A stretch of DNA of 64,000 bases from positions 5,146,001 through 5,210,000 of the forward strand of contig NC_090340.1 in NCBI RefSeq assembly GCF_035084215.1, read 5' to 3'. The position numbers were made by a program, and so were the translations under genes. Below are positions 2,239-45,464 of the stretch, one piece after another (positions within the stretch are counted from its first letter, which is position 1; every line of letters begins with the position of its first letter). This stretch comes from Heptranchias perlo (lineage: Eukaryota). The notes below the pieces were generated by a model. That model was not told the origin of the DNA. It saw nothing but the letters and a program-made list of their open reading frames with translations, and ran no database searches.

Positions 2239-2274
2239 CTACAGCAATCTATTTTCAACCGTCTCTTTCATGGT
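2239..2274 (-). CDS. Gene A putative terminal exon TMKETVENRLL* (degenerate Tyr-motif exon)
   Basis: ttttacag|ACC, phase 0. Aligns with gene B TKQRAPENKLTY, with TAG at the Tyr codon position. Residual MAYVAI and, in another frame, KERTVDY lie downstream. Confidence 0.55.
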   Translation of the reverse strand, partial: TMKETVENRLL

Positions 2275-5200
2275 CTGTAAAATTGAAGCGTTTTCCGGTT
2301 AGCTGGATTAGTCAGCAGAGTGATGTATGGAACAGAACGCGGTCGGCTGTAACTAAATTAATGTTTCAACGAATATGTCATTTGAATAAAGAATATATCA
2401 TAGCAGTATATCATTATTGAAATTTCACAACTTTTATTTTTGACCGCATCGTGCATAACATTTTCCGCCTGATCAGAGCGTCTTACAATCACGAAGATAT
2501 GTAAAAAAACACCATTACAATCCTTCGAATTCTAAAAATTCCTAGAAACTTAAAAGTAGAAGAATTTTCTTCCACACTCAGTGAACAACTGCATTGTGCC
2601 CAGAATGTGTGCCTCAGACATGGATTCAATGACACACAAAGAGGTGTTTTATCAATATTGAGAACTAGATGGCCAAGTGAAGTCGTGCATTGGGACCTGG
2701 AGTTTGAGTTCAGCCTGTACTGATAGATGACTCTCCATTTCTTGACTCATCTCGATCTCACTCGTCGTGTTGTGGTTTACAGCATCAAATGTACAATTTA
2801 TTAAAAATCGACATTGAAGAATTATTAACCTCACTCAGAGAAGCCAGCGATGAGTCGGCCCGAGAGTGGGGATGATACGCAAGGGCCAGTTGTCGTGTTC
2901 TTCATCAGGTGGAGCTTTATGCATTTTATTGAAGCCTAATTAATTAATCAGTTAATCAGTCTGTATCGAACTCTACTGCACCAGACCTCGGGGTGTTAAA
3001 TGGGGGAGTGTCGACGATGTTCTATTCTGCTCTGGGAGTGTTTGATGGGACAGAGTAGAGTAGAATTTGTTCACTATCCACCCCCTGCTGTACATGACTG
3101 GAAAAGTTTAAAGCTGGAAATGGGACTGATGGGGATTTATTGATTTTGTACATTGGCCCCTCGTGGACATGAACATAAATATTTACCAACAATCTAAATG
3201 TGAAAAATACGGGATAATCGCATAAGGCAGAGATTTCAAATATGCCCAGTTTTGGATCACATTCTTTTAAGACCTCAAGCATTTTCGAAAATGTACGAGA
3301 GAAACATACCCGTTCTTCGAAGTGTTGAGATTCCTCTTCTTTTCTGCGTGCGCCTAGTGAAATACAACATTTATCTTTCACCATACATCAGGAAGTGAGC
3401 CACTGAGAGCAGGAAAATCCGACTTAGTCTCAGCCAATAACACCTTCAGGATCGCAGCTCATGACAAGTTTTGAAAATTTCATCGCAACCAACCCCCACC
3501 CCCCTCCACTTCCTTTGAACAATTTTGAATTAAAGTTCCTGCAATCCATTCGGCCCATAACACATGGAATTACTGATTGGAATCTGTGAAAACAACCGAA
3601 AAATGTAAATAGCTTTTCTCATTAATCATTTATTTTATGTTCATGTGAATGACTCTTGGACAAATCATCTATATCAGATCGTGGAACCAATTAAAGCGGT
3701 TCAACAAATCAACAGAATTCGATTCCTGTAGCAGCTTCAACGCGTCTTAATCTGCCTGGCGTCATATTGTTCCCTTTTTTATTACAAATGTATCACAATG
3801 AAACTGCAGATTTGTCTCCTTACCTTTACAGTTACTGAGCTGACAACTCTTCCCAATGACGGCGACGAGGGCTAGAAGTATCAATGCACCCCCTGTACAT
3901 CCAGAAATCAGTAGGTAATGGGGGATGTGTTCATTGCCTATAGTAATAATAATGTGTTAGTTGCACGATTTATGTATTCAGTGCCTCCACAGCAGTGCAT
4001 GAGGACTGAGACTGTTAACTCGGGCAAGCTGATTTAGTTCTAGATATCAAATAGACATTTATTGTTCTGGTTTTCCCTTCAGCTGAATCTGGCCTGTGAA
4101 TTGTCTGCATTACAGGGGCAAAATATAATTTTCCGATTTTCATTGACACGACAATGATGAACTTTGAAGCTAAGAAGACTGTGGCGCAAATTGCAGCCGC
4201 ATTATTCATCCTTGGTTGATGCCTCCCGGATAGCGTCAGCTGAAACAGGGATTGATTTGGATCGGCAGGGTATCAATAAAGGGAAATATTTAATTAAATG
4301 AGAAAAAGACAGTCTATGTATTTTCTCTCTTTTAAAATACGAGGAATTGAATTTGATGAACATTAGTATATATCAGTTCATAATTATAATCTTTATAGAT
4401 TAAACTCTTTTCCTCTAATGGGGACGTTTTACTTTTGTATCCGTTTCACAAATCCGCAAATAGTAACAATCTTTAAATGAAAACTCTTTAAATTTATTGT
4501 CTGCCAAAAACAAAACTGACTGAGGGCAAATACGCAGATTTATAATTGACGATGGCTGCCAATATCTGTAAAAATGTCAACATCTTACCTGGGTTAGACG
4601 TGGAATCAAAGTAAACAGCCACGGCTGGACTCTGCAGTGTGAGGTGAGACACGACACAGGTATATATAACCCCGCTCTCGGCTAGCTGTGTCGCATTCAA
4701 ACTGCTGGAAGCTTCATATATTCCCTCCGAATTCAGTTTTTTAATGGTGGTGATTCCAGTCACAATGTTGGTGTCATTTTTATACCAAGTGAAGGTGAGA
4801 GGCTCTGGATAGAACACAGCCGTTGCACACACAAGAGTCAGAGCAGATGAGTTGGTTCCGGACACTTTGGGAGACAGACTCACGGGTTCTGGGGAAGCTG
4901 TGGAACAAGGTAGGGAATACATTGTCTCCGTGTTGCTAAGTTAGTCCGGTTTGGCGCTCATTCTTCTCGAATATAACAACGTGACTCTCAGTCACAGGTA
5001 CAGAACTAAACCACTGATTGTAACTGACCTGGATCTGAACAATTCGAAATAAGCTAGTTCCCATAACTTTCTATACTAAAATGCGGACTATTCACAACCG
5101 TGTTGCAGTAACAGGAGAATGCATTTCAGTGCGAGTAGATATTCAGGCCGTCGGTGCTTCGTGCTTAGTCCAGGGAAAGATTTAGATTTACCTATTAACT

Positions 5201-6196
5201 CAGCAGCTTTTTGCTCTTTTTTGTTATTGGGCAGCGTTTAATAAATAGGCGAAACGTATTCAGGGAATATAATTTCAAACTGTTCGCGTTAAGAATTGCA
5301 AATTTGGAACAAAGGGGCAAAATCATTACCGCCCAGAGTAGTGTTACTTTAAAGCCGGGATTATTGTCGGTACATTATAAATGGAGTCACAGAGTACAAA
5401 AGCCAGGAAGTTATGCTAAACATTTACAAATCGATGGTGAGACTTCAGCTGGTGCATTGTGTCCAATTCGGGGCACCATATTTTAGGAAGAATGCAAATG
5501 TTGTAGACGGGTTTACCAGAATTATACCACGGATGAGGGACTTCAATTCTGTGGAGAGACTGGAGAAGCTGGGATTGTTTTCCTTACAGCCGAGAAGGTT
5601 AACGGGAGATGTAATTGATATGTGCAAGATGATGTGGGGTTTTGCAAAAGTAAATAAGGAACAACTGTTTCCTTTGACAGGAGGATCGGTAAACAAAGAA
5701 CATGGATTGAAGACAATTGGCAAAAGAACTAGACGAAACAAGTGGAAATTTATTTTTTAAACAGCGAGATGTTATGGTCTGGAATGCCCTGAGTGAACCG
5801 GTGGTGAAAGCAGATTCAATAGTAACCTTCAAAAGAGAATTGAATGTATACATGAAATGTAATTTTGCAGGGTTATGGTTGAAGGGAAGTTGAGAGTGAC
5901 AAATGGGATAGCTCTTTCAAAGAGCCGACACATGTACGATGGGCGGAATGGCCGCTTTGACTGCTGTACGATTCTATGAAATTAGAAGCATTGTGACAAG
6001 AGTTTTTAAACACACAGGAACAAGTACATAAGACAGGAAGGATCTTAAAATACTCAGTAGCCCAGCTGTCCATTCCATAAATCTAATACCTCTGTAGCGT
6101 CCACTCCATCAAATATCGAATCAATTCTCCCGTAAAATTTTCAACATTATCTGCGCCCATCGGACAGTCCGTTTCGCATGTTTACCACCTTCTGCG

Positions 6197-6233
<37 letters not shown>

Positions 6234-7336
6234 CAGTTAAATCTAATGTCTCTGCCCACCTTCCCTCCGATAAGTTTCAGCCATTGTGCTTTGGCTGCCG
6301 TCTTTGTGGAAATTTCGAGCTAACTATCCATTCTCTTAATAGTCTTGAACACTTGAATAAAATACTCCATGCCCATTCTGTGCTCCAAAATAAACACGCC
6401 CGTGCTCCGCAATGTCTCATCGTTACTCAGGTACCTTAAACTAGTCTTCAGTTTGGCTGCCCTGGTTGAAAACTGCGTCCAATGCTTGTGTATCCTCACT
6501 GTCGTTTTTTGATAGAATTGTACACCGTATTCAAAGCGTCGGCGTGCCAGTTCCCCAATAATTTTACAATGCTAACACCAGGGATGAATTCAGTAAATAA
6601 GCAAAACAACTGATGATACAATATATTTAACTCCAGATACTTAAAACACTTTAAATATACCTGTACTGTAACTATCCATATATAAATATACTACAGATTG
6701 ACTGATAGCAATGTTTGAACAAAAGAAATCTCATAACGTGGCCATCTGCCTCTTTTCGTTATTGTGGAATGGCGGTAGTGCAATACCAAGGATCGCATAT
6801 ATCTGCAAGATCGCTTACCGTGCACAACAAGCTTCGATCCGGTTCCATTTACGATCCGGTTTCCCGTGTATCTCACTCCGCAGTAATAGAATCCGGAGTC
6901 TGGGACACGCACATTCACGATCTGGAAGGAAGCCTCTCCGTTTTCCAAAGGGAAGAATCGTTTACTGCCGTCAGAACTTGGTTTTAATAAGTGTTTGTCG
7001 CCAAGTCTCCACCAATAAACATTCACATCTGAATTATCATGGACGGAGCTCGTCAGGCATTTGAAAGTAACGTCTGCACCTGAAATCACACTGGTGCTTT
7101 CAGGGGTTTGGAAAACTTCAGCGGGAGCAACTATAAAACAGAAAAAAAACATTAATTTCAAAATAGGGATAAAAGATATTTAGGCACGGATAGATAAATT
7201 GATCGCCAAATAAAGAGATAGATGGATAAATTGATAGAGATAGAATATAGATCGAAGAAAGAAAGAATGGTCCATTATAGCAGATAATACCTTTGTAAAT
7301 AATCCCTAGCACCCATATGTACTGACACACAAACAT
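2239..7336 (-). CDS. Gene A: VJ-C1-TM immunoglobulin-superfamily receptor paralogous to gene B, with a short Tyr-free tail, about 286 aa; join(7291..7336,6819..7130,4589..4897,3824..3937,3310..3353,2239..2274)
   Basis: GT-AG introns, with phases 1,1,1,1,0 in frame. The first five exons are clear. The last exon is assigned by similarity to gene B exon 7 and is less certain. Confidence 0.78.
3310..3353 (-). CDS. Gene A exon 5, 44-nt cytoplasmic exon (GARRKEEESQHFEER)
   Basis: tttcactag|GC ... CGG|gtatgt. Lies in ORF 3022..3384. Same size and phase as gene B exon 5. Confidence 0.82.
3824..3937 (-). CDS. Gene A exon 4, transmembrane (GNEHIPHYLLISGCTGGALILLALVAVIGKSCQLSNCK)
   Basis: Manual translation. 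Acceptor actatag|GC, donor AAAG|gtaagg. YLLISxCxxG..LAL...IGK is shared with gene B. Confidence 0.9.
4589..4897 (-). CDS. Gene A exon 3, C1-set Ig domain (LTLVCATAVFYPEPLTFTWYKN..EGIYEASSSL..YTCVVSH)
   Basis: Within ORF 4494..4922. Acceptor ttccacag|CT, donor CCAG|gtaaga. 309 nt, as in gene B. Confidence 0.95.
5300..5975 (+). mobile_element. CR1 LINE 3' fragment in gene A V-C1 intron
   Basis: ORF 5413..5760: RLEKLGLFSLQPRRLTGD. 3' UTR hairpin gatgggcggaatggcc and ATTCTATG end. Confidence 0.9.
6201..6230. repeat. (TA)n microsatellite
   Basis: Direct read. Confidence 0.95.
6819..7130 (-). CDS. Gene A exon 2, V-set Ig domain with J-like strand (..VFQTPE..VTFKC..VYWWRLG..DSGFYYC..NGTGSKLVVH)
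   Basis: Within ORF 6691..7161. Acceptor ttttatag|TT, donor CACG|gtaagc. Confidence 0.95.
7291..7336 (-). CDS. Gene A exon 1, signal peptide MFVCQYIWVLGIIYK
   Basis: ATG at 7336, donor AAAG|gtatta (phase 1), 160-nt intron. QxIxVLGII is shared with the gene B leader. Confidence 0.8.
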
Positions 7337-7824
7337 TGTACAATGGATATTGATCAGCCAATGAACCACGGCTCGAATGGTTTGGAAGTATCTGTAGATA
7401 ATGCGATCTGACTTGTGATATGATAAGGTGTCGTATCATGTGCCTAAACCTGCTTTCGATAAGCTATTTTAAGTGGCGAGATGTGAATGCAAATGTCATT
7501 TAATGTGCATGAGAACCTGACCTCAATAGAAACTGTAATCTGAAGTTAAACCAAAGCCTCTCTGGTTGGCCTGTATGCGGTTTATCTCACTGACGTATGA
7601 TTAAGCAAGTAACAGGTTCTCGACACGTTGATGAAATTCACTGACTTCGTGGAAGCAGTTCATATTATACAGAAGATGGAGAAAGGAAGGGATGTGGGGG
7701 GTCGGTTTTCCAGTAAGCGAAGGTCGGAAAGCTTCAGCAAGAAGACAATTTGCGCTGAATCTGGTCCAAGTGACCCTGCCCCTAAACCGTCAGTATTTCC
7801 TCCCTCGGTCTGTATTGCCCATGC

Positions 7825-8192
7825 GGACACGATGGGCCGAATGGCCTCCTTCCGTGCTTTAACTATTCTATGATTCTATGATTATGTGGTCAAGAACCAG
7901 AGGACATAGATTTAAGACGATTGGCAAAAGATCCAGAGGTGACATGAGGAAAATGTTTTTTACACAGCGAGTGGTTATGATCTGGAACGCAGTACCAGAG
8001 GGGGTGGTGGAGGCAGATTCAATCGTGGTTTTTAAAAGGGAAGTGGATAATTACTTGAAAGGAAAATAAATGGCGAGCCACGGGGATAGGGCGGGAGAGT
8101 GGGACCAGCTGGACTAGTCTTGCATCGAGCCGGCACGGACTTGATGGTCCGAATGGCCTTCTTTCGTGCTGTAACCTTTCTATAATTCTATG
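7825..8192 (+). mobile_element. Two tandem CR1 3' ends
   Basis: ORF 7878..8069: SRTRGHRFK..FFTQRVV.IWN. gggccgaatggcct hairpin and (ATTCTATG)n occur twice. Confidence 0.88.
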
Positions 8193-28108: not shown

Positions 28109-28276
28109 TTACTTGGCTTTCCTTTCCGTGTAAATAACGTCTGATCTTTGGTTTTTCATCCGTAGCTGAGCGTACTCCGTGTTCTTATTCTTATGAATAG
28201 GCTTTGCAGTCTTCTTGGAGCCAGTCATATCTAGTGAAGCATAGGTCAGCTTGTTCTCAGGTGCCCTTTGCTTGGT
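28109..28276 (-). CDS. Gene B exon 7, terminal cytoplasmic (TKQRAPENKLTYASLDMTGSKKTAKPIHKNKNTEYAQLRMKNQRSDVIYTERKAK*)
   Basis: atttcacag|ACC. ITIM LTYASL and ITSM-like TEYAQL. TAA at 28109-28111. Confidence 0.85.
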   Translation of the reverse strand, partial: TKQRAPENKLTYASLDMTGSKKTAKPIHKNKNTEYAQLRMKNQRSDVIYTERKAK

Positions 28277-29124
28277 CTGTGAAATCAATGGTTGGACATC
28301 TCATGAGTTCGATAATTTACCTGTATGTAGGTTAGTGTTAATAATTAGAATAGCCGGAACCTCGCAGAATCAGGGTTAAATACAAAAGATTAGCAAAGTT
28401 CTATTAACGCTAGTTCGTGCACTACCCCGCATGCCCGTTAATTACAGGTAACTCGTGTCTCTTTGATCGACTCCTCGGCCGTACCTGGGCATATACTGTC
28501 CTCTCTTGATGCTTTGATCTTGGACCTTTCCAGGAATTAGTCAAATCTACTGCAGCATAAGGCGCCATCACATCTTCTGTTACCTGCATGGAATAAAAGT
28601 CAAAAATATACCTTTTTTTATTGCTATGCGGTTAGGCACTCCCTACGCAGAACGATGCGCGCAGGCCCAAAAATCCCGCGAAATTTCCAGGTCAAGAAAA
28701 TGAAGAAAAGTAAGGGATAAAAGTTCATTCCTGTTGTCCATTTATATGAATAGTCTGGTTGAAATAACCTGCAGCTGGCGAGGTTTATATCCTTGAAGTT
28801 TCACTTTCGTTGCAGCAAAAAGTATCAAAACAATTTAGATACTTTCTAAAATTGAGATGTTTCCATGAGAAGAAATGTGTTTTATAATTATACAATGCAT
28901 GGGATTGAATTAGAACAGGGACATTTAGAAAGGGGGTCTGAGGCTAACTTTCAGCAGACAGTTCACTTTCAACATACAGAAAAGTAAACATCATACAGAA
29001 TTCTGAAATCAATAATACGAACACAGAATACAAGAGGTTATTTTAAGCTATAAAATGAACATCTGGTCCACATTTAGAATCCTACCTTTAGATTTCAATT
29101 AATCTAAAATGTCACACTATCAAC

Positions 29125-29161
<37 letters not shown>

Positions 29162-32100: not shown

Positions 32101-35100
32101 CACTGATCATCAGTCGTTTTACCCATTAACAGATTGGCCCAGTTTACTGTGGACAGTTTCTGTCTCATCCCATTGAAGTCGGCCTTACCAAAGTCTAGAA
32201 TCTTAGCAACTGACTCACTTTTTTCCCTTTCAAACATTACATTGAACTCGATCATGTTATGATCGCTATTGGATAGATGTTCACGCACAGTTAAACTTTT
32301 ATCTAAGTCTGGTTCATTACTCATTGCTAAATCTAGTATGGCTTGCCCCCTTGTTGCCTCTAGGACATACTGCTGTAGAAAACTATCCCGGACACACTCA
32401 AGAAATTCAATACCTTTCTGAAAGTCGCTAGTCTGCTTTCCCCAATCTTTGTGAAGGTTAAAGTCCCCCATTAATACCACTATGCCTTTCTTACACGCTT
32501 ATCTAATCTCTGCATTTATACAATCTAGCATTTCAGAGCTGCTGCCAGGAGTCCTATGCACAACTCCCACTATAGTCCTAGATCCTTTCCTATTTCTCAA
32601 TGCAATCCATAAGGTCTCTGTTGGCTGCTTATCTCTCGTTATATCTTCCTTGATCAATGAATTGATTTCATCTCGAATCACTAAGGCTACTCCTCCAACT
32701 CTTCCATTTTCTCTATTTCTCCTGTAGACCTTATAACCCGGTATATTTAGTTCCCAATCCTGACCATCCTGCAGCCATCTCTCAGTACTAGCTATCATGT
32801 CATACCCTCCAATTTGAATTTGAACCTGTAGTTCATTTAATTTATTCCTTATACTCCGTGCATTTGTATATAGAACTCTTGGTATGGCCACACACCCTAG
32901 CCTGACCTTCAACTTTGATGCTGGGATAATCGCCTTACACCTTCTAGATTTCAATTCATCTGTAGTGTCTAACGTACACTTTCTTTCTGCTGCTCTACGC
33001 TTTTCCCTTTCACTTGTTCTTGAACAACTGTTTGTACTATTTTATTGTAAATTTCCCCTGGGTCTTCCATCTCTTGCTGCTCTCAACTTTACTCCCTTTT
33101 GACTCACCGCTAAGGGTCGAGTAAGGACGGCAACTTCCTTCCCTGAAGGACATTAGAGAACTAATGGGATTCAAGACAATCGAAAAGCTTCATGGTCACT
33201 TTTACTGATACCAACTTTTTATTTCCAGATTTTTAGAAACTGAATTCAAATTCTCAAACTGCCCTGGTTGAATTTGAACACACGTTCTGTAGATTTACTC
33301 CAGAGCTAATTAATGGGGATAACATTATGAACTGCGGTTGCAGCATTTTTCAACAAACGTGTCAGTTGTTTCCAGGAGGCAAAAGCAGATCGTTTTTATT
33401 ATTCGCCATAGCTGATGGTAAGTTTTAAGCAGTGTGTTATTTTACAATCCAGAGGTGACTGTTATATATCGGCTGCCACTGACCTACTGATACAGGCATT
33501 AAAAAATCTAGTGTTTCCTTGTGTGTGTGTGTGTGTGTGTGTTGCGTCAGTGCTGATACTCTGCACTTGTTTTGTGACAATCTTTACAGTGTTAGAATAA
33601 AACGGGGCAAATTATTGCATTAAATAGATTACAACTCTCTTATCTAAATATTTATAAAATAAATATATTAGGATGAATTGAGGAAACATACCGACTGTTC
33701 GCGATGGCCTGATCTTTCAGCATCGTTCTGAGGTCCTGGTAATGAATGAAGTTCAAGATTTTACAATGAAGCATTTTAACAACGTCGAAGGACGCTTCCG
33801 GGTAGACTCAATGTAAAGTATAAAATTATCTTGATATCACATTTTACGGAATTGCTTGGATTCTGAACTGTGTTTGACAACAGGGCTGGCATTGTTCAGC
33901 TGACCACGGGACTTTGCGTGCAGCAGGAGGCTGATTGGAAACTCGCTGGATCACTACCCGCAATTCTATGTTCACTGTCCTGAATGGGACAGAAAATCGC
34001 ACGCAATGTAAGGTGATTTTATAATAAAGCTCCCGCTGAATGCCAGCCTCCAGCGACGGTTGTGGGACCTTGGGAAATTTCGTCCCATTTTACCCAACAC
34101 TTTCGAAATCCGAATCTACCGATACACCGGTAGTGCTGAAATTTTATTCAAAACATTAGTTGCTGCAATTAGTATAAATAAAAATCAGACTGGAATGACT
34201 CTCAAGTATCCCTCATATTTTAAACCCAAGGTCTAACTGTTATATTCAACAATCGATCCAGTACCTGTGAGACAATGTAAATGTACTTTCAATCGTTCAG
34301 TTACAATTTACTAACTTTTTCTCTCGATGTATAATGGTATCATAGCAGGTACAGCATAGGAGGAGGCCTTTCGGCCCATCCTGTCTGTGCCGGCTCTTTG
34401 AAAGAGCTATCCAATTACTCCCATTCCCCTGCACCATAACCCTATATACTTTTCTATTCAAGGATTTTTCTAATTCCCTTTTGACAGATATTATTGAATC
34501 TGCTTCCACCACTCTTTCATTGCAGATAATTACAACTCGCCGTGTAAAATAATGTTTCCACATTTCGCCTATTGCTCTTTTGCCATCACCTTAAATCTGT
34601 GTCCTTTGGTAACCGACCCTTCTGCCACTGGAAACAGATTCTCCTTATTAATTCTGTCAAAATTATTCATTATCTTGAACGCATCTATCCAATCTCCTAG
34701 TAATCTTCTCTGTTGTAAGGAGAACAATCCCAGCTTCGCCAGTCCCTCTACATAACTGAAGTCCCTCATCCCTGGAACCATTCTAGTAAATCTCTTCTGC
34801 ACTCTCCCTAAGGCCTGACCTCCTTCCTAAAGTGCGGTGCCCGTAATTGAACACAATTCTCCAGCTGAGGCCGTAAAAGTGTTTTATGCCTTTGTTACCT
34901 CTAGACTTGACAATTCCAATGTTCTACTGGCCGGGCTCCCATCTTTCACCCTCCATAAATTTGAGCTCATCCAAAATTCTGCTGCTCGTATCCTAAGTCG
35001 CAACAAGTTCCGTTCACCCATCGCCCCTACATTGGCTCCCGGTCTGGGAAAGCCTCGACATTAAAATTCTCATCCTTGTTTTCAAATCCCTGCATGGCTT

Positions 35101-38100: not shown

Positions 38101-41100
38101 TCTTATCCTACTAGGCTTATACCTACTAGAGTATATCACTGGGAGTAATCCCGGGGACTCCAGTACTCCCAGGGGACTCCTGCACTGCCTGCCTGTTCTT
38201 CCCAGTCTGTCTGTCCCACTTCCTCTCCGCCTCAATTCTCTGTAACTGCGAGATAACAACCTTCTGAAACGTGCTATCCATGAAACTCTCAGCTTACCCT
38301 ATTCATTGTAGTGACGCCAGCCGCGCCTCAAGCTCAGAAACTCTGAGCTCAAGCTCGAGCAGATGGCGGCATTTCGTGCACATGTGGTTTTCCAGGACAC
38401 ACCAAGTGTTCTGAAGATCCCACATGGCACGGGATGTGCATGCAACAGGCCCCTGCTGTCCTGCCATGTTAACTCCAGTTATTTAAACTGTTTGTTTACA
38501 TTTAAGGCAATTTAACATAGAAAATAGGAGCAAGAGTAGGCCATTCGGCCTTTTGGGCCTGCTCCGCCGTTCAAAATGATCATGACTGATCGTCTAACTC
38601 AGTGCTCTGTTCCAGCTTTTTCCCATATCCCTTGCTCACTTCAGCATTAAGAAATGTGTCTATCTCCTTCTTGAATACATCTAATGACATGGCCTCCACT
38701 ACCTTCTGTGGTAGAGAATTCCATAGGTTCACCACCCTCTGAGTGAAGCAATGTCTCCTCATCTCGGTTCTAAATGGTATAGTCTCTATCCTGAGAATGT
38801 GACTCCTGGTTCTGGGCTACACAGCCATCTGGAACATCTTCCCTGCATCTAGTCTGTCTCGTCCTGTTAGAATTTTCTATCTTTCGATGAGATCACCTCT
38901 CATTCTTCTAATCTCGAGTGAATATAGGCCTAGTCGACCAATCTATCCTCATACGTCACTCCTGCCATCCCAGGAATCAGTCTGGAAAACCTTCGTTGCA
39001 CTCCCTCCATGGCAAGGACATCCTTCTTCAGATAAGGAGACCAAAACTGCACACAACACTCCAGATGTGGTCTCACTAAGGCCCTGTATAACTGCAGTAA
39101 GACATCCCTGCTCCTGTACTCAAATCCTCTTGCAATGAAGGCCAACATGCCATTCGCCATCCTAACTGTTTGCTGCACCTGAATGCTCGTTTTCAGCGAC
39201 TGGTATACAAGGACACCCAGGTCTCCCTGCGCCTCCACTTTTCCCAATCTATCACCATTCAAATAATAATCTGCCTTTCTGTTTTTTGCAACCAAGGTGG
39301 ATAACCTCACATTTCTCCATGTTATACTGCATCTGCCATGTTCTTGCCCACTCACCCAACTTGTCCAAATCACATTGGAGCTTCTTTGCATCCTCCTCAA
39401 AGCTCACATTCCACCCCAACTTTGTGTCGTCTGCAAACTTGGTAATGTTACATTTAGTTCCCTCACTTAAATCATTGATATATATTGTGAATAGCTGGGG
39501 CCTAAGCACTGAACCCTGCAGCACCCCACCAGTCACTGCCTGCAACCCGGAAAAAAGAACTGTGTGTCAACTAATTCTCAATCCATGCCAGTATATTCCC
39601 CCCAATCCCACGTGCTTTAATTTACACACTAACCTCTTGTGTGGGAACTTATCAAAAGCCTTCTGAATATCCAAATACAACAGATCCACTGGTTCTCCCC
39701 AATCTATTCTACTAGTTACATTCACAAAAAACTCCAGTAGATTTGTTAAGTAATATTTCGCTTTCATAAACCCATGCTGACTTTGTCCAATATCGTTAAT
39801 GCCCACCAAATGTTCTGTTATCATATCTTTTATAATAGATTCTAGCATTTTCCCCACTGCTGATGTTGGGCTAACAGGTCTGTAATTCCCTGTTTTTTCT
39901 CTCCCTCCTTTTTTAAGTAGTGGGACTAGATTTGCCACCCTCCAATCTATAGGACACTTCCAGAGTCGATAGAATTTTGGAAGATGATCACCAATGCATC
40001 CACTATTTCCAGTTCCACTTCCTTTAGTACTCTGGGATATAGATTATCAGGCCCTGGGGATTTGTCAGCCTTTAGGCCCGTTAATTTCCTGAGCATTTTT
40101 TATTTACGAATACTGGTTTCCTTCAGTTCCTCCCTCTCAGGAGACCTTTAGTTCCCTAATATTTCTTGCAGGTTATTTGAGTCCTCCTTTGTGAAAGTAT
40201 GTGTTCAATTGTTCTGTCATTTCTTTATTGCCCATTATAATTTCCGCCATTTCTGACTGTAAGGGACCTACGTTTGTCTTCACTAATCTTTTTCGTGGGA
40301 ATTTACCCTTTATCTAACACTAAAACACTAACCACTAAAAAACAATAACCACTAAAGACACTAACCAATTAACAAATTAATGGCTGACTTGTATTAAACG
40401 CTCCTCTTTTTCTTTTGACGTCACTGTTTTACTTTCTCTATTTTTGATTCCCTGCGCCGGTCCCTTCACGCTCCGCTTAATACCCTCAGTCTCTCAGAAT
40501 ACCCTCTAACAACTTACCCACCACAGATGTCAGGCTCACCAGTCTGTAGTTCCCAGGCTTTTCCCTGCCGCCCTTCTTAAACAAAGGCACAACATTTGCT
40601 ACCCTCCAATCTTCAGGCACCTCACCTGTAGCTGTCCATGATTCAAATATCTCTGCGAGGGGACCCGCAATTTTCTCCATAACCTCCCATAACGTCCTGG
40701 GATACATTTCATCAGGTCCCGGAGATTTATCTACCTCGATGCGCGTTAAGACTTCCAGCACCTCCCTCTCTGTAATATGTACACTCCTCAAGACATCACT
40801 ATTTATTTCCCCAAGTTCCCTAAAATCCATGCCTTTCTCAACCGTAAATACCGATGTGAAATATTCATTCATGATCTCACCCATGTCTTGTGGTTCCGCA
40901 CATAAATGACCTTGTTGATCCTTAAGAGGCCCCACTCTCTCCCGAGTTACTTTTTTGCCCTTTATGTATTTGTAGAAGCTCTTTGGATTCTCCTTTGCCT
41001 TATCTGTCAAAGCAATCTCATGTTCCCCTTTTTGCCCTCCTGATTTCTCTCTTAACTCTACTCCGGCAATCTCTATACTCTTCAAGGGATCCACTTGATC

Positions 41101-44100
41101 CCAGCTGCCTATGCATGTCATATGCCTGCTTCTTAATTTTGACTCGGGCTTCAATCTCCCGAGTCATCCAAGGTTCCCTACTTCTACCAGCCTTGCCCTT
41201 CACTTTATAAGAAATGTGCTTACCCTGAACCCTGGTTAGCACACTTTTGAAAGCCTCCCACTTACCAGACGTCCCTTTGCCTGCCAACAGTCTCTCCCAA
41301 TCAACTTCTGAAAGTTCCTGTCTAATACCATCAAAATTGGCCTTTCCCCAATTTAGAATTTTAACTTTTGGGCCAGACCTATCATTCTCCATAGCTATCT
41401 TAAAACTAATGGAATCATGATCACTAGTCCCAAAGTGATCCCTCACTAACACTTCTGTCACCTGCCCTTCCTTATTTCCCAAGAGGAGGTCAAGTTTTGC
41501 CCCCTCTCTAGTCGGGCCATCCACATACTGAATGAGAAATTCCTCCTGAATACACTCAACGAATTTCTCTCCATCCAAGCCCCTAATGCTATGGCTGTCC
41601 CAGTTAATGTTGGGAAAGTTAAAGTCCCCTAGTATTACCACCCTATTTTTCTTGCAGCTGTCTGTAATCTCCTTACATATTTGCTCCTCAATTTCCCGTT
41701 GACTATTTGGGGGTCTGTAGTACAATCCTTTCAATGTCATCTCTCCCTTCTTATTTTTCAGTTCTACCCATATAGACTCAGTGGGCGAACCCTCGGATAT
41801 ATCCCCTCTCACTACTGCCGTGATGTTCTCCCTAATCAAGAACGCAACTCCCCCTCCTCTCTTACCTCCTGCTCTATCTTTCCTATAGCATCTGTACCCT
41901 GGAACAATGAGCTGCCAATCCTGCCCCTCCCTTAGCCATGTTTCAGTAATAGATATAACATCCCAGTCCCATGTACCCATCCATGCCCTGAGTTCATCTG
42001 CCTTTCCCATCAGACTTCTTGCATTGAAATAAATGCAGTTTAATCTGGAATTCCCTTGGTCTTTGCACTGCTTTCGCAGACCATCTGTCCGGTCATGTTT
42101 TGTACACTCTCCCTTACTGCCTTTTGTTTCTATCACCACTTTACTTCCCACTGACTTCCTGCATCGGTTCCCACCCCCCTGCCACATTAGTTTAAACCCT
42201 CCCCAACAGCACGAGCAAACACTCCCCCTAGGACATTGGTTCCAGTCCTGTCCAGACGCAGACCGTCCAATTTGTACTGGTCGCACCACCCCCAGAACCG
42301 GTTCCAATGGCCCAGGAATTTGAATCCCTCCCTCTTGCACCATCTCTCAAGCCACGTATTCATCCTAGCTATCCTGTCATTCCTACTCTGACTAGCCCGT
42401 GGCACTGGTAGCAATCCTGAGATTACTAACTTTGAGGTCCTACTTTTTAGTTTAAATCCTAACTCCCTAAATTCAGCTTGTAGGACCCCATCCCGTTTTT
42501 TACCTATATCGTTGGTACCTAAATGTACCACGACAACTGGCTGTTCACCCTCCCCTCCGGAATGTCCTGCAGCCGCTCCGAGACATCCCTGACCCTTGCA
42601 CCAGGGAGGCAACATACCATCCTGGAATCTCGGTTGCGTCCGCAGAAACGCCTGTCTATTCCCCTTACAATCGAGTCCCCGATCAATATAGCTCTGCCAC
42701 TCTTTTTCCTGCCCTCTTGTGCAGCAGAGCCAGCCACGGTGCCATGAATCTGGCCGCTGCCACCTTCCCCTGGTGAGCCATCTCCCACAACAGTATCCAA
42801 AACGGTATGCCTGTTTTGGAGGGAGATGACCGCAGGGGACCCCTGCACTGCATTCCTACTCTTCCTCACTCGGTTAGCAATACACTCCTTTAAAGTTTCA
42901 CTCCCTGTCTTTGCCAACCTCTGTACGCAAGCTTAGGACGTTCTCGCTCTCTCTTTGAAAGTTGTGTTCACTTTGGTAAAAAGACTAAATGGTTTCTTAC
43001 CTTTATTTTTCTTTGAGATACACCGTTTTCCAATGATGAGAGCCAACGCCAGGAATATCAATCCGCCCGCTGCACATGCTGAAATCAGCAAGTAACGGGT
43101 GAACTCACCACCTACAAGATTTAGGTGAAATGTACAAATATGAAACAGTGCACTGTTCAATTGAACAATATCATGACTTAAAAGGTCAGCAACATTTTAA
43201 TCAATTGTTGCTATTTTAGTAATGTTATATTTAAGGTATAGTTTTATGAAACAAAACACAAAATGCAGAGCTATGTTTATTTTTTTTCATGCGTGAGGAA
43301 CACATTACTGTTATATTATCTTGCCTTAAACTCAAATCTGATTGAAATAAGTTTGCGATATAAATGTGATAATGATTAATTTGTTACTTGTTATGACGGC
43401 TAACAGTAGTTGCTAAAATTGCAGCTTGCTGCAGATTTCGAGCAAGGTTTAAAGAATGCAGCAGGCAGCGGTCCCGCCTCTCGGCGTAACGACTTGGAAC
43501 TGCAGGACGCGAGTTACTGCTCGATGTTGTCCCAGGCGTCAGTTCCATGTCTCGACCGTGACTCCCACTGGGGCAAGGGGTGCCGAACAGCGTTGGCTTT
43601 GGAGCTGAACACCTGGCAGAAATCCATGGATAATTATATTTGCTCTTAAGCAAACAAATGATGGGGGAGGCATCTCAGAAAATAGTTTTACTTGCAGGAT
43701 AACTGAGACCTGCAATCTTACCTGTTGGGTAGAAGACAATGTGAGTGGCTATGGCAGGAATTTCGATGGTATTGTGAGTCACCAGGCAGGTATACACAGT
43801 CCCGGTCCGGACAGGCTGCGTCTCTTCCAAACGGCTGGAAGCTTCATATAGTCCATCTGTTTTGAGTTGAATAATGCTATTTATCCCTGGTGTAGTTTTA
43901 GTCCCATTTTTATACCAAGTGAAGGTGATATTCTGCGGGTAAAACGGATTTGTCGCACACACAACAGTTAGAGAGGAAGATGAATCCTTTCCAGGTTCCC
44001 GAGAGGTAATTTTTAGTGGAGTTGGGGGAACTAGAAAAAAGGAGGAAAATAACGTTATTCGGGCATCATTCAAGGTTATCAACATGTCGTTTTGTTTCGG

Positions 44101-45464
44101 CCCATTACTGACAGCACAAAGAGGGAGTTGTTCACTGTGCGTTATCCTTAACGACATCGTTAACGGCATCTTCATAAATTTTAACTTTAAATCGGGGGTA
44201 ATTTTAACATTTATCGCAGGGCGAGAAACGGGTGACAACTGATGGGAAAAAAATCGAGCGGGGTCTAAAAAGGGCGGTCGATTCACTATCGCCTGTTTTG
44301 CGCTAACCGCCGAAGCCCATATCCACTCTCAAGTACAATAACTGACAAGAAAGTACATTTGACCGAACGCGAGGGGCTTTGGCACACACGTTCTGGGTGA
44401 TATCCTATTTACTGAAGACTGAAAGGATGATGAAAATGTGGAGTGTGTGGTCAGGAAAGTTTTCGGAATTTAACTGTTAATAACATCGGAGTTGCAAGCA
44501 TCCTAACATATAGACCATTAAATTATAAACGCGGGAAGCTGAATTTTAATAGAAACTGTCAGCCCTCCTTAACCAACGCAAACAGAATAAACCGATAAGA
44601 TCCGTGCTTACCGGGCAAATGCGCGCTGGTATGCAATTCAGTCGATACGCATCCTTTAATCAGCAATTTTAACTTCACATGAATATTGGTGAAATATATA
44701 TCATTCTACCGGATAATTGGAATGTATACATATAATACAACGATTGTTATTTGAGTTTCAATGTGAATCCTTCAAAGTACAACCGACAAATGCGTATACA
44801 AGTGTGAAACAGTGTAGAATGTAAACAATTCTAAAGCATGATTCATGCGCTGGATAAATCTGCTGTGAAATGTTTCGGTCACGTTGATCTTATTCGCCGC
44901 TATTGTTATACTTACCCCATACAGTTAAATTGGATCCCGTTCCGTTTCCAACTAGTCTCCCTTGATGGGAGATAGTGCAATAGTATACTCCCGAGTCCTT
45001 TACACTCACACTGAGTAGCTGAAGGAAGCCGCTGAACTTAGTTCTGAAGCCAGTTAATTTTCTGTCATCCAGCACTGTACTTAGATATTCATTGTCACCC
45101 TGTTTCCACCAGTTCACCTTCACACGTGGGCCGGATTGAAAGAAGGAAATCGAGCAATGAAAGGAGACGTTTGCACCAATATTTCTGCTCACGGTTTCGG
45201 GGAGCTGAGTCACTTTGACCGAAGTTTCACCGGAGCCTATCAGAAAAGACAATCAAAACATAATTAGTGAGGTTATATTTCAGGAGGAAAAGCTCGAGGG
45301 CAGTGGAATCAGGCAAACAGTCCAAAGGGCAATGATACATTTTATGTGAAGGAGAAGTTATGCAATTATGCGTTTTAGCGAGAATGCAGGATATAGAAGG
45401 AACAGTTACCTGTGAAAATGATCCCCAGAACAGAGATGCATTGGAGTACAACACTCGTCAACAT
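28109..45464 (-). CDS. Gene B: complete 7-exon VJ-C1-TM-ITIM/ITSM immunoglobulin-superfamily receptor (SIRP/SHPS-1-like), 368 aa; join(45410..45464,44916..45236,43722..44030,43001..43111,33692..33735,28485..28583,28109..28276)
   Basis: All introns are GT-AG. Phases 1,1,1,1,0,0 join into one open frame of 1107 nt. It encodes a signal peptide, V-set and C1-set cysteine/tryptophan motifs, a hydrophobic TM and a four-Tyr tail. Exon sizes match paralogous gene A (C1 309 nt; first cytoplasmic exon 44 nt). Confidence 0.88.
28485..28583 (-). CDS. Gene B exon 6, cytoplasmic (VTEDVMAPYAAVDLTNSWKGPRSKHQERTVYAQ)
   Basis: ttccatgcag|GTA ... CAG|gtacgg. 99 nt, phase 0/0, two Tyr motifs. Confidence 0.82.
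29126..29197. repeat. Two (AT)n microsatellites in gene B intron 5
   Basis: Direct read. Confidence 0.92.
29865..33303 (-). mobile_element. SINE-like repeat (29865-29997 and 33101-33303) split by a CR1 insertion
   Basis: The two flanks read as one continuous shark repeat (..ggaatcacatgtagact / ..gtaaggacggcaacttccttccctgaaggacattag..). A degenerate B box gtgttcaaattc is present on the minus strand. Confidence 0.55.
29998..33100 (-). mobile_element. CR1 LINE with essentially complete but frameshifted ORF2 (APE plus RT), sense-oriented in gene B intron 5
   Basis: ORFs 32499..32954 (LYTNARSIRNK..TE.WL), 31992..32480, 31021..31440, 30559..31008 (PQGSVLGP..FADDTK) and 30079..30357. Confidence 0.95.
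33521..33542. repeat. (GT)n microsatellite
   Basis: Direct read. Confidence 0.95.
33692..33735 (-). CDS. Gene B exon 5, 44-nt cytoplasmic exon (GPQNDAERSGHREQS)
   Basis: ttaccag|GA ... TCG|gtatgttt. Same length (44 nt), same phases (1->0) and same gtatgtttc donor as gene A exon 3310..3353. Confidence 0.8.
34872..35415 (+). mobile_element. L2-clade LINE 3' fragment
   Basis: ORF 34837..35064: AFVTSRLDNSNVLLAGLP..LIQNSAARIL. ORF 35144..35386: GDRAFS..GPKLWNSIP..LKTYLF. Confidence 0.88.
36645..37530 (+). mobile_element. Penelope-like element 3' part encoding GIY-YIG endonuclease
   Basis: YCIRCSQC, then LYTGETKRSIIDRFAE..VVCHFN..EEQHLILRFGTLQPSGLN (ORF 37081..37350). Upstream RSLRDTLVHS..FPC..RCNTC linker. 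Confidence 0.88.
38515..40295 (-). mobile_element. 5'-truncated CR1 LINE
   Basis: ORFs 39567..39938, 39252..39545, 38930..39400 and 38580..38762. Confidence 0.93.
40486..42870 (-). mobile_element. Well-preserved CR1 segment: ORF1 SGNH-esterase, ORF2 APE and linker, with RT and 3' end missing
   Basis: ORFs 42519..42917 (LIGDSIVRG), 42187..42615 (HLGTND..DGL), 41018..42343 (YFNARSL..TETWL..GDFN..SDH) and 40486..41154. Confidence 0.95.
43001..43111 (-). CDS. Gene B exon 4, transmembrane (GGEFTRYLLISACAAGGLIFLALALIIGKRCISKKNK)
   Basis: Acceptor cttgtag|GT, donor AAAG|gtaaga. About 22 uncharged residues followed by a basic stop-transfer segment. Homologous to the gene A TM exon. Confidence 0.92.
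43722..44030 (-). CDS. Gene B exon 3, C1-set Ig domain (LTVVCATNPFYPQNITFTWYKNG..DGLYEASSRL..YTCLVTH)
   Basis: Within ORF 43675..44286. Acceptor tttctag|TT, donor ACAG|gtaaga. C1 signature CxxxxFYP..W..YxCxVxH. Confidence 0.95.
44916..45236 (-). CDS. Gene B exon 2, V-set Ig domain with built-in J-like strand (..VTQLPE..VSFHC..VNWWKQG..DSGVYYC..GNGTGSNLTVW)
   Basis: Within ORF 44890..45252. Acceptor gatag|GC, donor TGGG|gtaagt. Canonical Cys-Trp-DxGxYxC and GxG motifs. Confidence 0.95.
45410..45464 (-). CDS. Gene B exon 1, signal peptide MLTSVVLQCISVLGIIFT(G)
   Basis: ATG at 45464, hydrophobic core, phase-1 donor ACAG|gtaact, 173-nt intron before the V exon. Shares VLGII with the gene A leader. 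Confidence 0.85.

What the first reader, a model, noticed from the sequence alone, without database searches (positions are those of the whole stretch)
2239..45464. Tandem pair of germline-joined VJ-C1 receptors: an antigen-receptor-shaped, non-rearranging immune receptor cluster
Seen: two same-strand paralogues about 21 kb apart with the same exon plan (leader, V, 309-nt C1, TM, 44-nt cytoplasmic exon). Each V exon already contains the J-like G strand (NGTGSKLVV; NGTGSNLTV), and I see no RSS beside either V. Known: C1-set domains are largely confined to Ig, TCR, MHC, beta2m, tapasin, B7-family and SIRP proteins. A single V plus a single C1 plus TM is the topology of a TCR chain, whereas mammalian SIRPs are V-C1-C1. 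Inference: a cartilaginous-fish SIRP/NKp30-like multigene family resembling the proposed pre-RAG ancestor of antigen receptors. My hand alignment gives only about 37% (V) and 44% (C1) identity, so the duplication is old and both ectodomains have stayed open. Automated pipelines may already label such genes 'SHPS-1-like', so the novelty would lie in family identity and function.
Basis: partly seen in the sequence, partly recalled or inferred. Interest (0 to 1): 0.8.

Follow-up and report, generated by a model that had tools for sequence, protein, structure and literature searches.

The report
Shark non-rearranging VJ-C1 receptor pair
Two neighbouring shark genes encode ready-made, antibody-like surface receptors (one V and one C1 domain), one with an inhibitory tail and one without, and they belong to a large family seen only in sharks, rays and chimaeras that databases predict under misleading names.

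Summary
Two minus-strand genes share one exon plan: split leader, single-exon V with a J-like strand, 309-nt C1, TM exon and 44-nt cytoplasmic exon. All splice sites are canonical, and no RSS flanks either V.

- **Gene A (7336-2239):** it equals, exon for exon, a 286-aa RefSeq model from Heptranchias perlo named 'NCR3 ligand 1-like'. It stops before an ITIM-like remnant.
- **Gene B (45464-28109):** it has two further tail exons carrying five tyrosines, laid out much like the SIRP-alpha tail. One spliced RNA contig joins its C1, TM and 44-nt exons exactly.
- **Family range:** every relative found is chondrichthyan. That is 40 of 40 and 30 of 30 named samples.
- **Age:** the A and B lineages are older than the shark-ray split.
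- **Nearest known proteins:** the ectodomain is about equally far from lambda light chains, SIRP-alpha and UrIg2.

Best reading: a non-rearranging VJ-C1-TM receptor family, here one inhibitory member and one tail-less member. It is not a SIRP by architecture, since it has one C1. A link to PRARP stayed untested.

This scan had already found the family at several other places in this genome. I found no paper describing it.

The parts
7291..7336 (-). Gene A leader exon (ATG at 7336; MFVCQYIWVLGIIYK, phase 1 donor)
   Evidence: It is identical to residues 1-15 of RefSeq model P0182. A 160-nt intron to the V exon gives a split leader.
6819..7130 (-). Gene A V exon (312 nt), V-set domain with the J-like G strand NGTGSKLVV at 6849-6823
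   Evidence: Pfam V-set 6.2e-11. AG/GT borders. 103/103 identical to P0182. No RSS-like site nearby.
4589..4897 (-). Gene A C1 exon (309 nt), C1-set domain
   Evidence: Pfam C1-set 6.9e-12. 102/102 identical to P0182.
3824..3937 (-). Gene A transmembrane exon (114 nt; YLLISGCTGGALILLALVAVIG, no charged residue inside)
   Evidence: 37/37 identical to P0182.
3310..3353 (-). Gene A 44-nt cytoplasmic exon (ARRKEEESQHFEER)
   Evidence: Found by a splice-and-frame scan. It equals P0182 residues 262-275.
2191..2274 (-). Gene A last exon. Coding part is 2274-2239 (TMKETVENRLL, TAG at 2241-2239). After the stop come the remnant MAYVAI... and a kept GT donor at 2190.
   Evidence: P0182 ends with ENRLL.
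45410..45464 (-). Gene B leader exon (ATG at 45464; MLTSVVLQCISVLGIIFT)
   Evidence: 16/18 identical to the Heterodontus leader of P0007. 173-nt intron to the V exon.
44916..45236 (-). Gene B V exon (321 nt), V-set domain with the J-like strand NGTGSNLTV at 44946-44920
   Evidence: Pfam V-set 1.3e-8. Family V HMM 172.7 bits. 72% identical to Heterodontus P0006.
43722..44030 (-). Gene B C1 exon (309 nt)
   Evidence: Pfam C1-set 9.2e-14. An RNA contig covers 43855-43722 with 0 mismatches and splices to the TM exon.
43001..43111 (-). Gene B transmembrane exon (111 nt; YLLISACAAGGLIFLALALIIG)
   Evidence: It is joined to the C1 exon in the RNA contig; the skipped 610 nt have GT..AG ends on the minus strand.
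33692..33735 (-). Gene B 44-nt cytoplasmic exon (PQNDAERSGHREQS)
   Evidence: Scan. The loose end of the RNA contig beyond the TM exon matches 33705-33734 exactly.
28485..28583 (-). Gene B tail exon 1 (99 nt; VTEDVMAPYAAVDL...RTVYAQ; two tyrosines 21 residues apart)
   Evidence: Family TAIL HMM 60.4 bits. 78% identical to P0001.
28109..28276 (-). Gene B tail exon 2 with stop (168 nt; ...KLTYASLDM...NTEYAQLRM...VIYTERKAK*)
   Evidence: Family TAIL HMM 76.6 bits. 82% identical to P0001 over 57 aa.

Best explanation
These are two intact members of a large, non-rearranging IgSF receptor family of cartilaginous fishes. Each encodes a type I membrane protein with a split leader, one V domain whose J-like G strand is already in the V exon, one C1-set domain, a transmembrane helix and a cytoplasmic part.

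Gene B carries a two-exon tail with a canonical ITIM (LTYASL), an ITSM-like TEYAQL and two further tyrosine motifs (APYAAV, TVYAQT). They sit in two pairs, 21 and 22 residues apart. Inferred: on ligand binding these tyrosines are phosphorylated and each pair docks the tandem SH2 domains of SHP-1 or SHP-2, so the receptor inhibits the cell that bears it, as SIRP-alpha does.

Gene A comes from a different and much older lineage of the family. Its ectodomain is only 39-47% identical to B's, so it probably has another ligand. It ends at a stop codon just before the first tyrosine motif and has no charged residue in its membrane span. Inferred: it is a tail-less surface form, acting as a decoy, a competitor or a partner chain, rather than a classical DAP12-type activating receptor.

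Shown: gene structures, domain types, absence of RSS, one spliced transcript of gene B, family range and the age of the split. Inferred: surface expression, ligands, SHP recruitment and the role of gene A.
For: - Exon models have canonical splice sites and consistent phases.
- Pfam finds V-set and C1-set in both genes.
- Gene A is identical, exon for exon, to the 286-aa RefSeq model P0182.
- One 291-nt RNA contig with 0 mismatches joins gene B's C1, TM and 44-nt exons.
- No RSS lies at either V exon.
- The tail motifs and their spacing were read. They are conserved in Heptranchias P0001, Heterodontus P0007, Mobula P0012 and Callorhinchus P0017.
- SIRP-alpha's ITYADL/TEYASI pair is 23 residues apart in the peptide printed in PMC5589908 (passage). 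ITYADL and LTYADL are named as its ITIMs in PMC5413580 (passage).
- All relatives found are chondrichthyan: 5 of 5, 23 of 23 and 40 of 40. So are 30 of 30 named proteins that I picked from the 87 short hits.
- Gene A's Heterodontus orthologue P0039 (70% V, 77% C1) is also tail-less.
- A and B fall in separate well-supported clades. B's clade holds sharks and four batoids; A's V clade holds sharks and a Mobula.
Against: - No function was tested. The ligand, the expressing cell type and SHP binding are all inferred.
- RNA support is one contig in one of three runs from a single sample, and the run's type is only guessed as RNA. It covers three exons of gene B, not its V or leader exon.
- No RNA was laid on gene A.
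- No 100%-identical database protein for gene B was retrieved, so its full model rests on my exon calls and on cross-species similarity.
- Two of gene B's tyrosine motifs (APYAAV, TVYAQT) do not fit the ITIM or ITSM consensus as I recall it.
- Gene A could be a decaying copy. The stop sits just before an ITIM-like remnant, and the exon's donor is kept.
Confidence: 0.8

Rival explanations
1. The family is the cartilaginous-fish counterpart (co-orthologues) of SIRP. It shares an ancestor with SIRP-alpha and differs only by having one C1 domain instead of two.
For: - Many relatives are auto-named SHPS-1-like or SIRP-beta-1-like.
- The family profile aligns to SIRP-alpha d1-d2 in one stretch (54 bits) and to d3 (37 bits). 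The total of 91 bits is third among all PDB chains.
- The tail has two tyrosine pairs, with LTYASL and TEYAQL resembling LTYADL and TEYASI.
- One skate model (P0024) is V-C1-C1.
Against: - There is a single C1 exon per gene here and in nearly all relatives.
- A lambda light chain scores higher than SIRP-alpha on the same V-C1 stretch (61 against 54 bits).
- SIRP V is not among the 60 best PDB hits of the V profile.
- No bony-vertebrate SIRP appeared among the named hits.
- The two C1 domains of P0024 are near-identical copies, so they are a recent duplication or an assembly artefact.
- Short tyrosine motifs converge easily.
Confidence: 0.2
2. The family is the chondrichthyan branch of PRARP. 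As I recall the abstract of Fu et al. 2019, PRARP is a non-rearranging VJ(-C1) gene family with an ITIM, described in chicken with V-C1 orthologues in bony fish, amphibians and reptiles.
For: - The layout is the same as I recall it: joined VJ, one C1, TM and an ITIM.
- PRARP is listed among joined-VJ IgSF genes in PMC11599192 (passage).
- It is listed among VJ genes of the MHC in PMC10751288 (passage).
Against: - This was not tested. I had no PRARP sequence, and the paper is not held.
- The 40 named hits of the profile search and the 30 named samples include no bony fish, amphibian or reptile protein. A close orthologue there would be expected to score.
Confidence: 0.12
3. Gene A is a pseudogene in the making: a former inhibitory receptor disabled by a premature stop. 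It is not a working tail-less receptor.
For: The TAG at 2241-2239 sits one codon before the remnant MAYVAI. That aligns with gene B's MAPYAAV, and the exon still has its GT donor.
Against: - All six coding exons are open with canonical splice sites.
- The RefSeq pipeline models it as protein-coding, ending at the same stop.
- Its Heterodontus orthologue keeps 70% (V) and 77% (C1) identity and is also tail-less.
- Other tail-less members exist, P0015 and P0018.
Confidence: 0.12
4. They are germline-joined immunoglobulin light-chain or TCR genes, of the kind sharks are known to carry. Some auto-names say 'Ig lambda-1 light chain-like'.
For: - The best fold matches of the modelled ectodomain are Fab light chains. 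All 46 rows listed (ranks 1-50) have E about 1e-16 and 21-27% identity.
- Lambda V-C gives the best single-stretch PDB score, 61 bits.
- The leader is split.
Against: - Both genes have a TM exon and cytoplasmic exons.
- Gene B has an ITIM tail.
- Identity to light chains is only 21-27%.
- The family forms its own group of 87 short representatives, all V-C1(-TM-tail).
- The TM has none of the charged residues that, as I recall, TCR chains use to assemble with CD3.
Confidence: 0.02
5. Gene A is a B7-family ligand, as its RefSeq name 'NCR3 ligand 1-like' (B7-H6-like) says.
For: - The RefSeq name of P0182.
- A weak hit of gene A's V to CD276 (E 4.7e-5).
- An Atlas look-alike cluster named NCR3 ligand 1.
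Against: - No B7-family chain is among the 60 best PDB hits of the V, C1 or whole-family profiles.
- Gene A groups firmly inside the VJ-C1 family next to ITIM-tailed members.
Confidence: 0.04

Closest known systems
SIRP family (SIRP-alpha/SHPS-1, SIRP-beta, SIRP-gamma)
   Same: - N-terminal V domain with a joined J-like strand, followed by C1-set domain(s).
- Type I membrane protein.
- Gene B's tail has two pairs of tyrosine motifs, with LTYASL and TEYAQL resembling LTYADL and TEYASI at similar spacing.
- The profile aligns over d1-d2 (54 bits) and d3 (37 bits).
- Tail-bearing and tail-less members exist side by side.
   Different: - One C1 domain, not two.
- It is no closer in sequence than a lambda light chain.
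- The family is very large and is seen only in cartilaginous fishes.
- Gene A has no basic TM residue of the kind that, as I recall, SIRP-beta has.
- CD47 binding is unknown.
UrIg and UrIg2 (non-rearranging shark antigen-receptor-like genes; PMC12227049, introduction and UrIg2 section read)
   Same: - Single-exon VJ domain, split leader and C1-type constant domains.
- Non-rearranging and restricted to cartilaginous fish.
- UrIg2 (PDB 9dmx) is the top PDB hit by summed score for both C1 exons and for the family profile.
   Different: - UrIg has three C domains and is secreted. UrIg2 has nine to eleven C domains. Here there is one C1.
- Per-domain scores to UrIg2 (26-50 bits) are no better than to C-lambda or SIRP.
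- Here there is an ITIM tail, and there are very many gene copies.
Ig light chains and TCR chains
   Same: - V-C1 ectodomain.
- Split leader.
- J-type GxG bulge.
- Best fold matches are Fab light chains.
- Best single-stretch sequence score is to a lambda chain.
   Different: - No RSS and no separate J segment.
- TM plus a signalling tail.
- The F/W of the J motif FGxG is replaced by N of a conserved N-G-T sequon.
- No charged TM residues.
PRARP (Fu et al. 2019; not readable here, features recalled)
   Same: As recalled: non-rearranging joined VJ, one C1 in non-avian orthologues, TM and an ITIM.
   Different: No sequence comparison was possible. PRARP is reported from bony vertebrates, and none of those appeared among my named hits.

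Membership tests
SIRP family | V-set N-terminal domain with a J-like G strand encoded in the V exon | tested here: met
   Pfam V-set. NGTGSKLVV and NGTGSNLTV lie inside the V exons. PMC11599192 lists SIRP among joined-VJ genes.
SIRP family | Two membrane-proximal C1-set domains (V-C1-C1), as in the solved SIRP-alpha and SIRP-gamma ectodomains | tested here: not met
   One C1 exon per gene by six-frame HMM scan. The SIRP chains 2wng and 4i2x show two C1 matches each.
SIRP family | SIRP-alpha-type tail: four tyrosines in two pairs that bind SHP-1/2 | tested here: inconclusive
   Gene B has two pairs, 21 and 22 residues apart, with one canonical ITIM. SIRP-alpha's first pair is 23 apart. Only motifs were compared: no alignment statistic and no binding test. 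Gene A has no tyrosine in its tail.
SIRP family | Groups with SIRPs rather than other V-C1 proteins by sequence | tested here: inconclusive
   Profile against PDB: lambda V-C 61 bits, SIRP-alpha d1-d2 54, UrIg2 V-C1 50. No tree with SIRPs could be built because no SIRP sequences were at hand.
SIRP family | Conserved synteny with the SIRP locus; CD47 binding | not tested
Binding needs the bench.
Rearranging antigen receptors (IgL/TCR) | Separate V and J segments flanked by RSS | tested here: not met
   J-like strand is inside the V exon. No heptamer-spacer-nonamer at the V exon ends. Only 2 weak chance-level sites within 600 nt, out of 38 in the window.
Rearranging antigen receptors (IgL/TCR) | V-C1 ectodomain with split leader | tested here: met
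UrIg/UrIg2 | VJ exon followed by three or more C1-type domains | tested here: not met
   One C1 here. UrIg has 3 and UrIg2 has 9-11 C domains (PMC12227049).
UrIg/UrIg2 | Closest sequence relatives are UrIg or UrIg2 | tested here: inconclusive
   UrIg2 is the top PDB hit only by summing its three C domains. Per domain it scores 31-35.5 bits, against 47 for C-lambda and 41.8 for SIRP-gamma d3.
PRARP | Orthology to chicken and bony-vertebrate PRARP genes | not tested
   No PRARP sequence was available and the paper is not held.
B7 family (NCR3LG1/CD276), the RefSeq name of gene A | V and C domains group with B7 members | tested here: inconclusive
   Only a weak CD276 hit (E 4.7e-5). No B7 chain is in the top 60 of three profile searches. 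No tree was built.
Chondrichthyan VJ-C1-TM family (unnamed; defined here by alignment A1) | Matches the family profiles for V, C1 and TM, and nests among members in trees | tested here: met
   Family HMM scores in bits: V 94 and 173, C1 116 and 169, TM 33 and 62. Both genes nest in supported clades.

The most novel reading that the evidence does not exclude
This family, rather than UrIg/UrIg2, is the nearest living likeness of the membrane-bound VJ-C1-TM chain that the RAG transposon split. It has one V, one C1, a split leader and a TM, which is the exact topology of a TCR chain. It predates the shark-chimaera split and sits about equally far from IgL, SIRP and UrIg2. Tail-less chains like gene A may pair with ITIM-bearing or arginine-bearing chains as heterodimers, which would foreshadow two-chain antigen receptors.
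Probability: 0.06. Interest if true: 0.85.

Novelty: new variant of a known kind. Interest (0 to 1): 0.45.

Why it matters
Non-rearranging genes with a joined VJ exon and a C1 domain are sought as relics of the antigen-receptor precursor (PMC12227049; PMC10751288). This family adds a third chondrichthyan example beside UrIg and UrIg2, and it is the only one of the three with the one-V, one-C1, membrane-anchored layout of a TCR chain.

The family is very large, old (chimaeras to sharks) and comes in inhibitory, tail-less and, by earlier notes of this scan, arginine-anchored forms. That suggests a major innate recognition system in cartilaginous fishes whose ligands are unknown.

In practical terms, public annotation scatters the family over at least seven misleading names: SHPS-1-like, SIRP-beta-1-like, Ig lambda-like, tapasin-related-like, NCR3LG1-like, CD276 homolog and MHC class II beta-like. 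This can distort gene counts for those real families in shark genomes.

This particular locus adds little beyond the earlier finds in this genome. What it adds is an old A/B lineage pair side by side and a transcript-confirmed splice chain.

Tried and rejected
- **Germline-joined IgL/TCR:** rejected because of the TM and tail exons and only 21-27% identity to light chains.
- **B7/NCR3LG1 reading of gene A's RefSeq name:** no support beyond one weak CD276 hit.
- **RSS search:** a scan asked for a heptamer starting CAC with at least 5/7 matches, a nonamer with at least 6/9, and spacers of 11-13 or 22-24. It gave 38 sites in the window. Two lie within 600 nt of a V exon, and neither is at the V 3' end. 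The only stronger site (58224) has no V nearby.
- **Tail homology by tools:** Pfam gave nothing meaningful for the tail exons (SIT domain E 0.035 for P0001). The Atlas search of the tail gave one unnamed cluster at 0.81, which is chance level.
- **Atlas search of the ectodomain:** it gave only generic V-set + C1-set clusters.
- **Looking for bony-vertebrate relatives:**
  - The exhaustive profile search lists only its best 150 hits, down to E 3.8e-30. Of these, 87 are 520 aa or shorter and all carry family-type domains. The other 63 are long multi-Ig proteins.
  - IgL, TCR, SIRP or PRARP-level relatives would fall below that cut, so they were not seen. The gap is a limit of the listing, not proof of absence.
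  - I named only 30 of the 87, chosen by me towards weaker and tail-bearing hits, not at random.
- **Trees:** proteins over 520 aa were left out, as were domains covering fewer than 86 HMM positions or with E above 1e-5. The V tree had 94 rows and the C1 tree 115. The method was quick IQ-TREE with SH-aLRT only and a midpoint root, and many forks are unresolved. No outgroup was available, so I claim no order of events beyond clade membership.
- **Literature:**
  - I searched 'UrIg' and SIRP/cartilaginous fish/C1-set/ITIM.
  - I searched primordial immune complex/nonrearranging and antigen receptor precursor/nonrearranging.
  - I searched signal regulatory protein/shark/VJ domain and PRARP.
  - None showed a paper describing this family.
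  - The library lacks most subscription journals.
  - Fu 2019, Ohta 2019 and Flajnik 2023 were not held.
Table S1 and fig. S1 of PMC12227049 might bear on other VJ-C1 genes.
- **Error corrected:** I first set gene B's last exon to start at 28275 or 28274. The right start is 28276. The tail2 row therefore gave nothing and is not used.

Full report
**What is there.** The window has no N. On the minus strand there are two genes with the same plan. I read the sequence and set exon borders by frame and splice sites (refined).

Gene A:
- leader 7336-7291
- V 7130-6819 (312 nt)
- C1 4897-4589 (309 nt)
- TM 3937-3824 (114 nt)
- 44-nt exon 3353-3310
- last exon from 2274, with TAG at 2241-2239

Gene B:
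- leader 45464-45410
- V 45236-44916 (321 nt)
- C1 44030-43722 (309 nt)
- TM 43111-43001 (111 nt)
- 44-nt exon 33735-33692
- tail exons 28583-28485 and 28276-28109

All acceptors are AG and all donors GT. The phases chain correctly, and the coding sums are 861 nt (286 aa) and 1107 nt (368 aa). The two 44-nt exons came from a scan for AG...GT exons of length 2 mod 3, scored against the matching stretch of relatives. They were the top hits in each gene, and both have GTATGT donors.

A six-frame scan with family HMMs finds one V, one C1 and one TM exon per gene and nothing else of the family in the 64 kb. My identities are 39/99 for V and 46/98 for C1, and the intergenic gap is 20.8 kb.

**Independent support for the models.**

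Gene A: its six exon translations occur, each 100% identical and in order, in P0182. Single junction residues sit between the first five exons, and the last two abut directly. P0182 is a 286-aa RefSeq model from Heptranchias perlo named 'natural cytotoxicity triggering receptor 3 ligand 1-like', and it ends at the same stop. So gene A is already annotated, under a doubtful name.

Gene B: the run search returned three runs of one sample, with the library type only guessed as RNA. Laid on 42950-45900, run X1 gave a 291-nt contig with no mismatch. It covers 43855-43722 and skips 610 nt whose ends read GT..AG on the minus strand. It then covers 43111-43001 and runs on for 45 letters. The printed 30 letters of that loose end match 33705-33734 exactly, which is the 44-nt exon.

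That is one spliced molecule type joining C1, TM and the 44-nt exon. It is one contig from one sample, and it does not reach the V or leader exons. Runs X2 and X3 laid nothing. Two further X1 contigs are 90-95% alike to the C1 exon at higher depth and must come from paralogues. No 100% protein for gene B was retrieved. Its length of 368 aa was outside the window but inside those, so it may be unannotated or modelled differently.

**Domains and the non-rearranging state.** Pfam gives V-set and C1-set for the four Ig exons. The V exons carry the canonical features: the two cysteines, WW, DSGxYxC, and the G strand G-N-G-T-G-S-x-L-x-V. Against the J consensus FGxGTx(L/V)xV quoted in PMC11599192 (passage), the GxG bulge and the L and V are kept. 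The F is replaced by N of an N-G-T sequon, which is present in 11 of the 13 V-bearing rows of alignment A1.

The leader is split from the V exon by 160 and 173 nt, as in antigen-receptor genes (PMC12227049). No RSS-like heptamer-spacer-nonamer sits at either V exon end. The loose scan gave 38 sites in the window, 2 of them within 600 nt of gene B's V exon but not at its 3' end, and none near gene A's.

**Tails.**

Gene B's two tail exons give APYAAV and TVYAQ(T), 21 residues apart. They then give LTYASL and TEYAQL, 22 apart, plus VIYTER. LTYASL fits the ITIM consensus and TEYAQL is ITSM-like; I recall both consensus forms from memory. The layout recalls SIRP-alpha. ITYADL and LTYADL are its ITIMs, with TEYASI between them (PMC5413580, passage). 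ITYADL and TEYASI are 23 residues apart in the SHP-2-activating peptide printed in PMC5589908 (passage). The tail is conserved in sevengill, horn shark, devil ray and chimaera relatives.

Gene A's matching exon has a TAG one codon before MAYVAI and keeps its donor, so its cytoplasmic part has no tyrosine. Its TM has no charged residue. Its horn-shark orthologue P0039 (70% V, 77% C1) is also tail-less. That argues for an old, kept state rather than fresh decay.

**Family and age.**

Word-indexed searches found only cartilaginous-fish proteins: 5 of 5, 23 of 23 and 40 of 40 with the family profile.

The exhaustive profile search of 1.84 billion representatives gave 5105 hits at E up to 1e-3 and 143 at E up to 1e-30. 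Of the 150 listed, 87 are 520 aa or shorter, and all of these carry family-type V and/or C1 domains, most with TM and many with the tail. The other 63 are long multi-Ig proteins whose scores add up over many domains. I looked up names for 30 of the 87, my own choice leaning to weak hits. All 30 are chondrichthyan, from 15 species spanning sharks, rays, skates and a chimaera.

The names are inconsistent: SHPS-1-like, SIRP-beta-1-like, Ig lambda-1 light chain-like, tapasin-related-like, NCR3 ligand 1-like, CD276 homolog, MHC class II beta-like and uncharacterized.

In quick ML trees, gene B's V falls in a 13-row clade (SH-aLRT 97) and its C1 in an 18-row clade (99). Both hold sharks and four batoids. 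Gene A's V falls in a separate 15-row clade (99) with sharks and a Mobula, and its C1 in a separate 8-row shark clade (96). So the A/B split is older than the shark-ray divergence. The trees have no outgroup and many unresolved forks.

**Relation to known families.**

- The top PDB hit for each C1 exon and for the profiles is UrIg2 (9dmx), but only by summing its three C domains. Per domain, the C1 profile scores 47 bits to a lambda constant domain, 41.8 to SIRP-gamma d3 and 31-35.5 to UrIg2 C1-C3.
- The V profile's best single-domain matches are TCR, IgL, CD79b, shark NAR and pIgR V domains. No SIRP V is in the top 60.
- The whole-family profile aligns in one V-C1 stretch to a lambda chain (61 bits), SIRP-alpha d1-d2 (54) and UrIg2 V-C1 (50).
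- An AlphaFold model of the horn-shark member P0007 has mean pLDDT 61 (V blocks 60-88, C1 blocks 72-93). It matches Fab light chains in all 46 rows listed (ranks 1-50).
- So the ectodomain is antigen-receptor-chain-shaped and roughly equidistant from IgL, SIRP and UrIg2.
- It fails the SIRP architecture (two C1 domains) and the UrIg/UrIg2 architecture (three or more C domains).
- PRARP, which as I recall has the same V-C1-TM-ITIM layout in bony vertebrates, could not be compared.

**How it most likely works.**

Shown: two intact type I receptor genes with V-C1 ectodomains, one with an ITIM-type tail.

Inferred for gene B: the V domain binds a ligand, Src-family kinases phosphorylate the paired tyrosines, and SHP-1 or SHP-2 docks through its tandem SH2 domains and damps activation.

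Inferred for gene A: it has a very different V (39% identical) and no signalling motif. It may serve as a decoy or competitor for another ligand, or as a partner chain. It lacks the basic TM residue of classical activating partners. Earlier notes of this scan report such arginine-bearing members elsewhere in this genome (not checked by me).

The conserved glycan site at the J bulge, where Ig and TCR V domains bury an aromatic residue in the V-V interface (recalled), hints that these V domains do not pair the antigen-receptor way. This is inference only.

**Novelty and limits.** This scan had already met the family at about -2.4, -2.3, -1.1, +9.7 and +10.1 Mb on the same piece and on other pieces. 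Earlier follow-ups reached the same family-level view and also found no paper. First-stage notes also place further copies about 10 kb beyond and 37 kb before this window (not checked).

My seven literature searches found no description of the family. But three key papers and all supplements were out of reach.

I rate it a new variant of a known kind: a non-rearranging VJ-C1 inhibitory receptor, SIRP-like in tail and light-chain-like in ectodomain. It is of moderate interest, and this locus is one more instance of it.

Noticed in passing
window 35700-42920 and 30000-33000 (minus strand): Decayed LINE copies lie inside gene B's two long introns, on the gene's own strand. Their ORFs include an endonuclease domain (41018-42343, Exo_endo_phos 6.6e-17), an RT fragment (30559-31008, RVT_1 5e-11) and an ORF1-like GDSL esterase (42187-42615, 4.7e-8). 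They account for much of the 9.3-kb and 5.1-kb introns.
   Followed up: partly
window 5375-5979 (gene A V-C1 intron); copies at 50434-51000, 16057-16672, 34340-34868, 60214-60797, 55648-55958: A repeat of about 600 nt, 67-72% alike between copies, occurs six times in the window. It overlaps ORFs that look like the C-terminal part of a LINE reverse transcriptase.
   Followed up: no
window 58224 (+ strand): This is the only stronger RSS-like site in the window: CACAGTG, a 12-nt spacer, then TCTAAAACC (7/9). No V-like exon is nearby by HMM scan, and one such site in 128 kb of two strands is within chance.
   Followed up: partly
window 43809-44029 (gene B C1 exon), run X1: Two RNA contigs 90-95% alike to gene B's C1 exon have a higher contig depth (29-32.5 against 6.7). 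So at least one paralogue is transcribed in the same sample.
   Followed up: no
window 44031-44169 (gene B V-C1 intron) versus protein P0001: The RefSeq model P0001 comes from a sevengill paralogue (76% C1). It starts at an ATG inside the intron upstream of its C1 exon and lacks the V domain. Its first 46 or so residues align with the translation of gene B's intron. The model is therefore probably truncated, and the two genes are close enough for their introns to align.
   Followed up: partly
protein P0024 (Amblyraja radiata): One skate model is V-C1-C1-TM-tail with two near-identical C1 domains. This is either a recent exon duplication giving a SIRP-like three-domain form, or an assembly or model artefact.
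   Followed up: no
window 6849-6841 and 44946-44938; alignment A1: The J-like strand starts with an N-G-T glycosylation sequon in both genes and in 11 of 13 V-bearing relatives aligned. It sits where Ig and TCR J segments have F or W.
   Followed up: partly
window about 6190-6240 (gene A V-C1 intron): A (TA)n microsatellite of roughly 40 nt.
   Followed up: no
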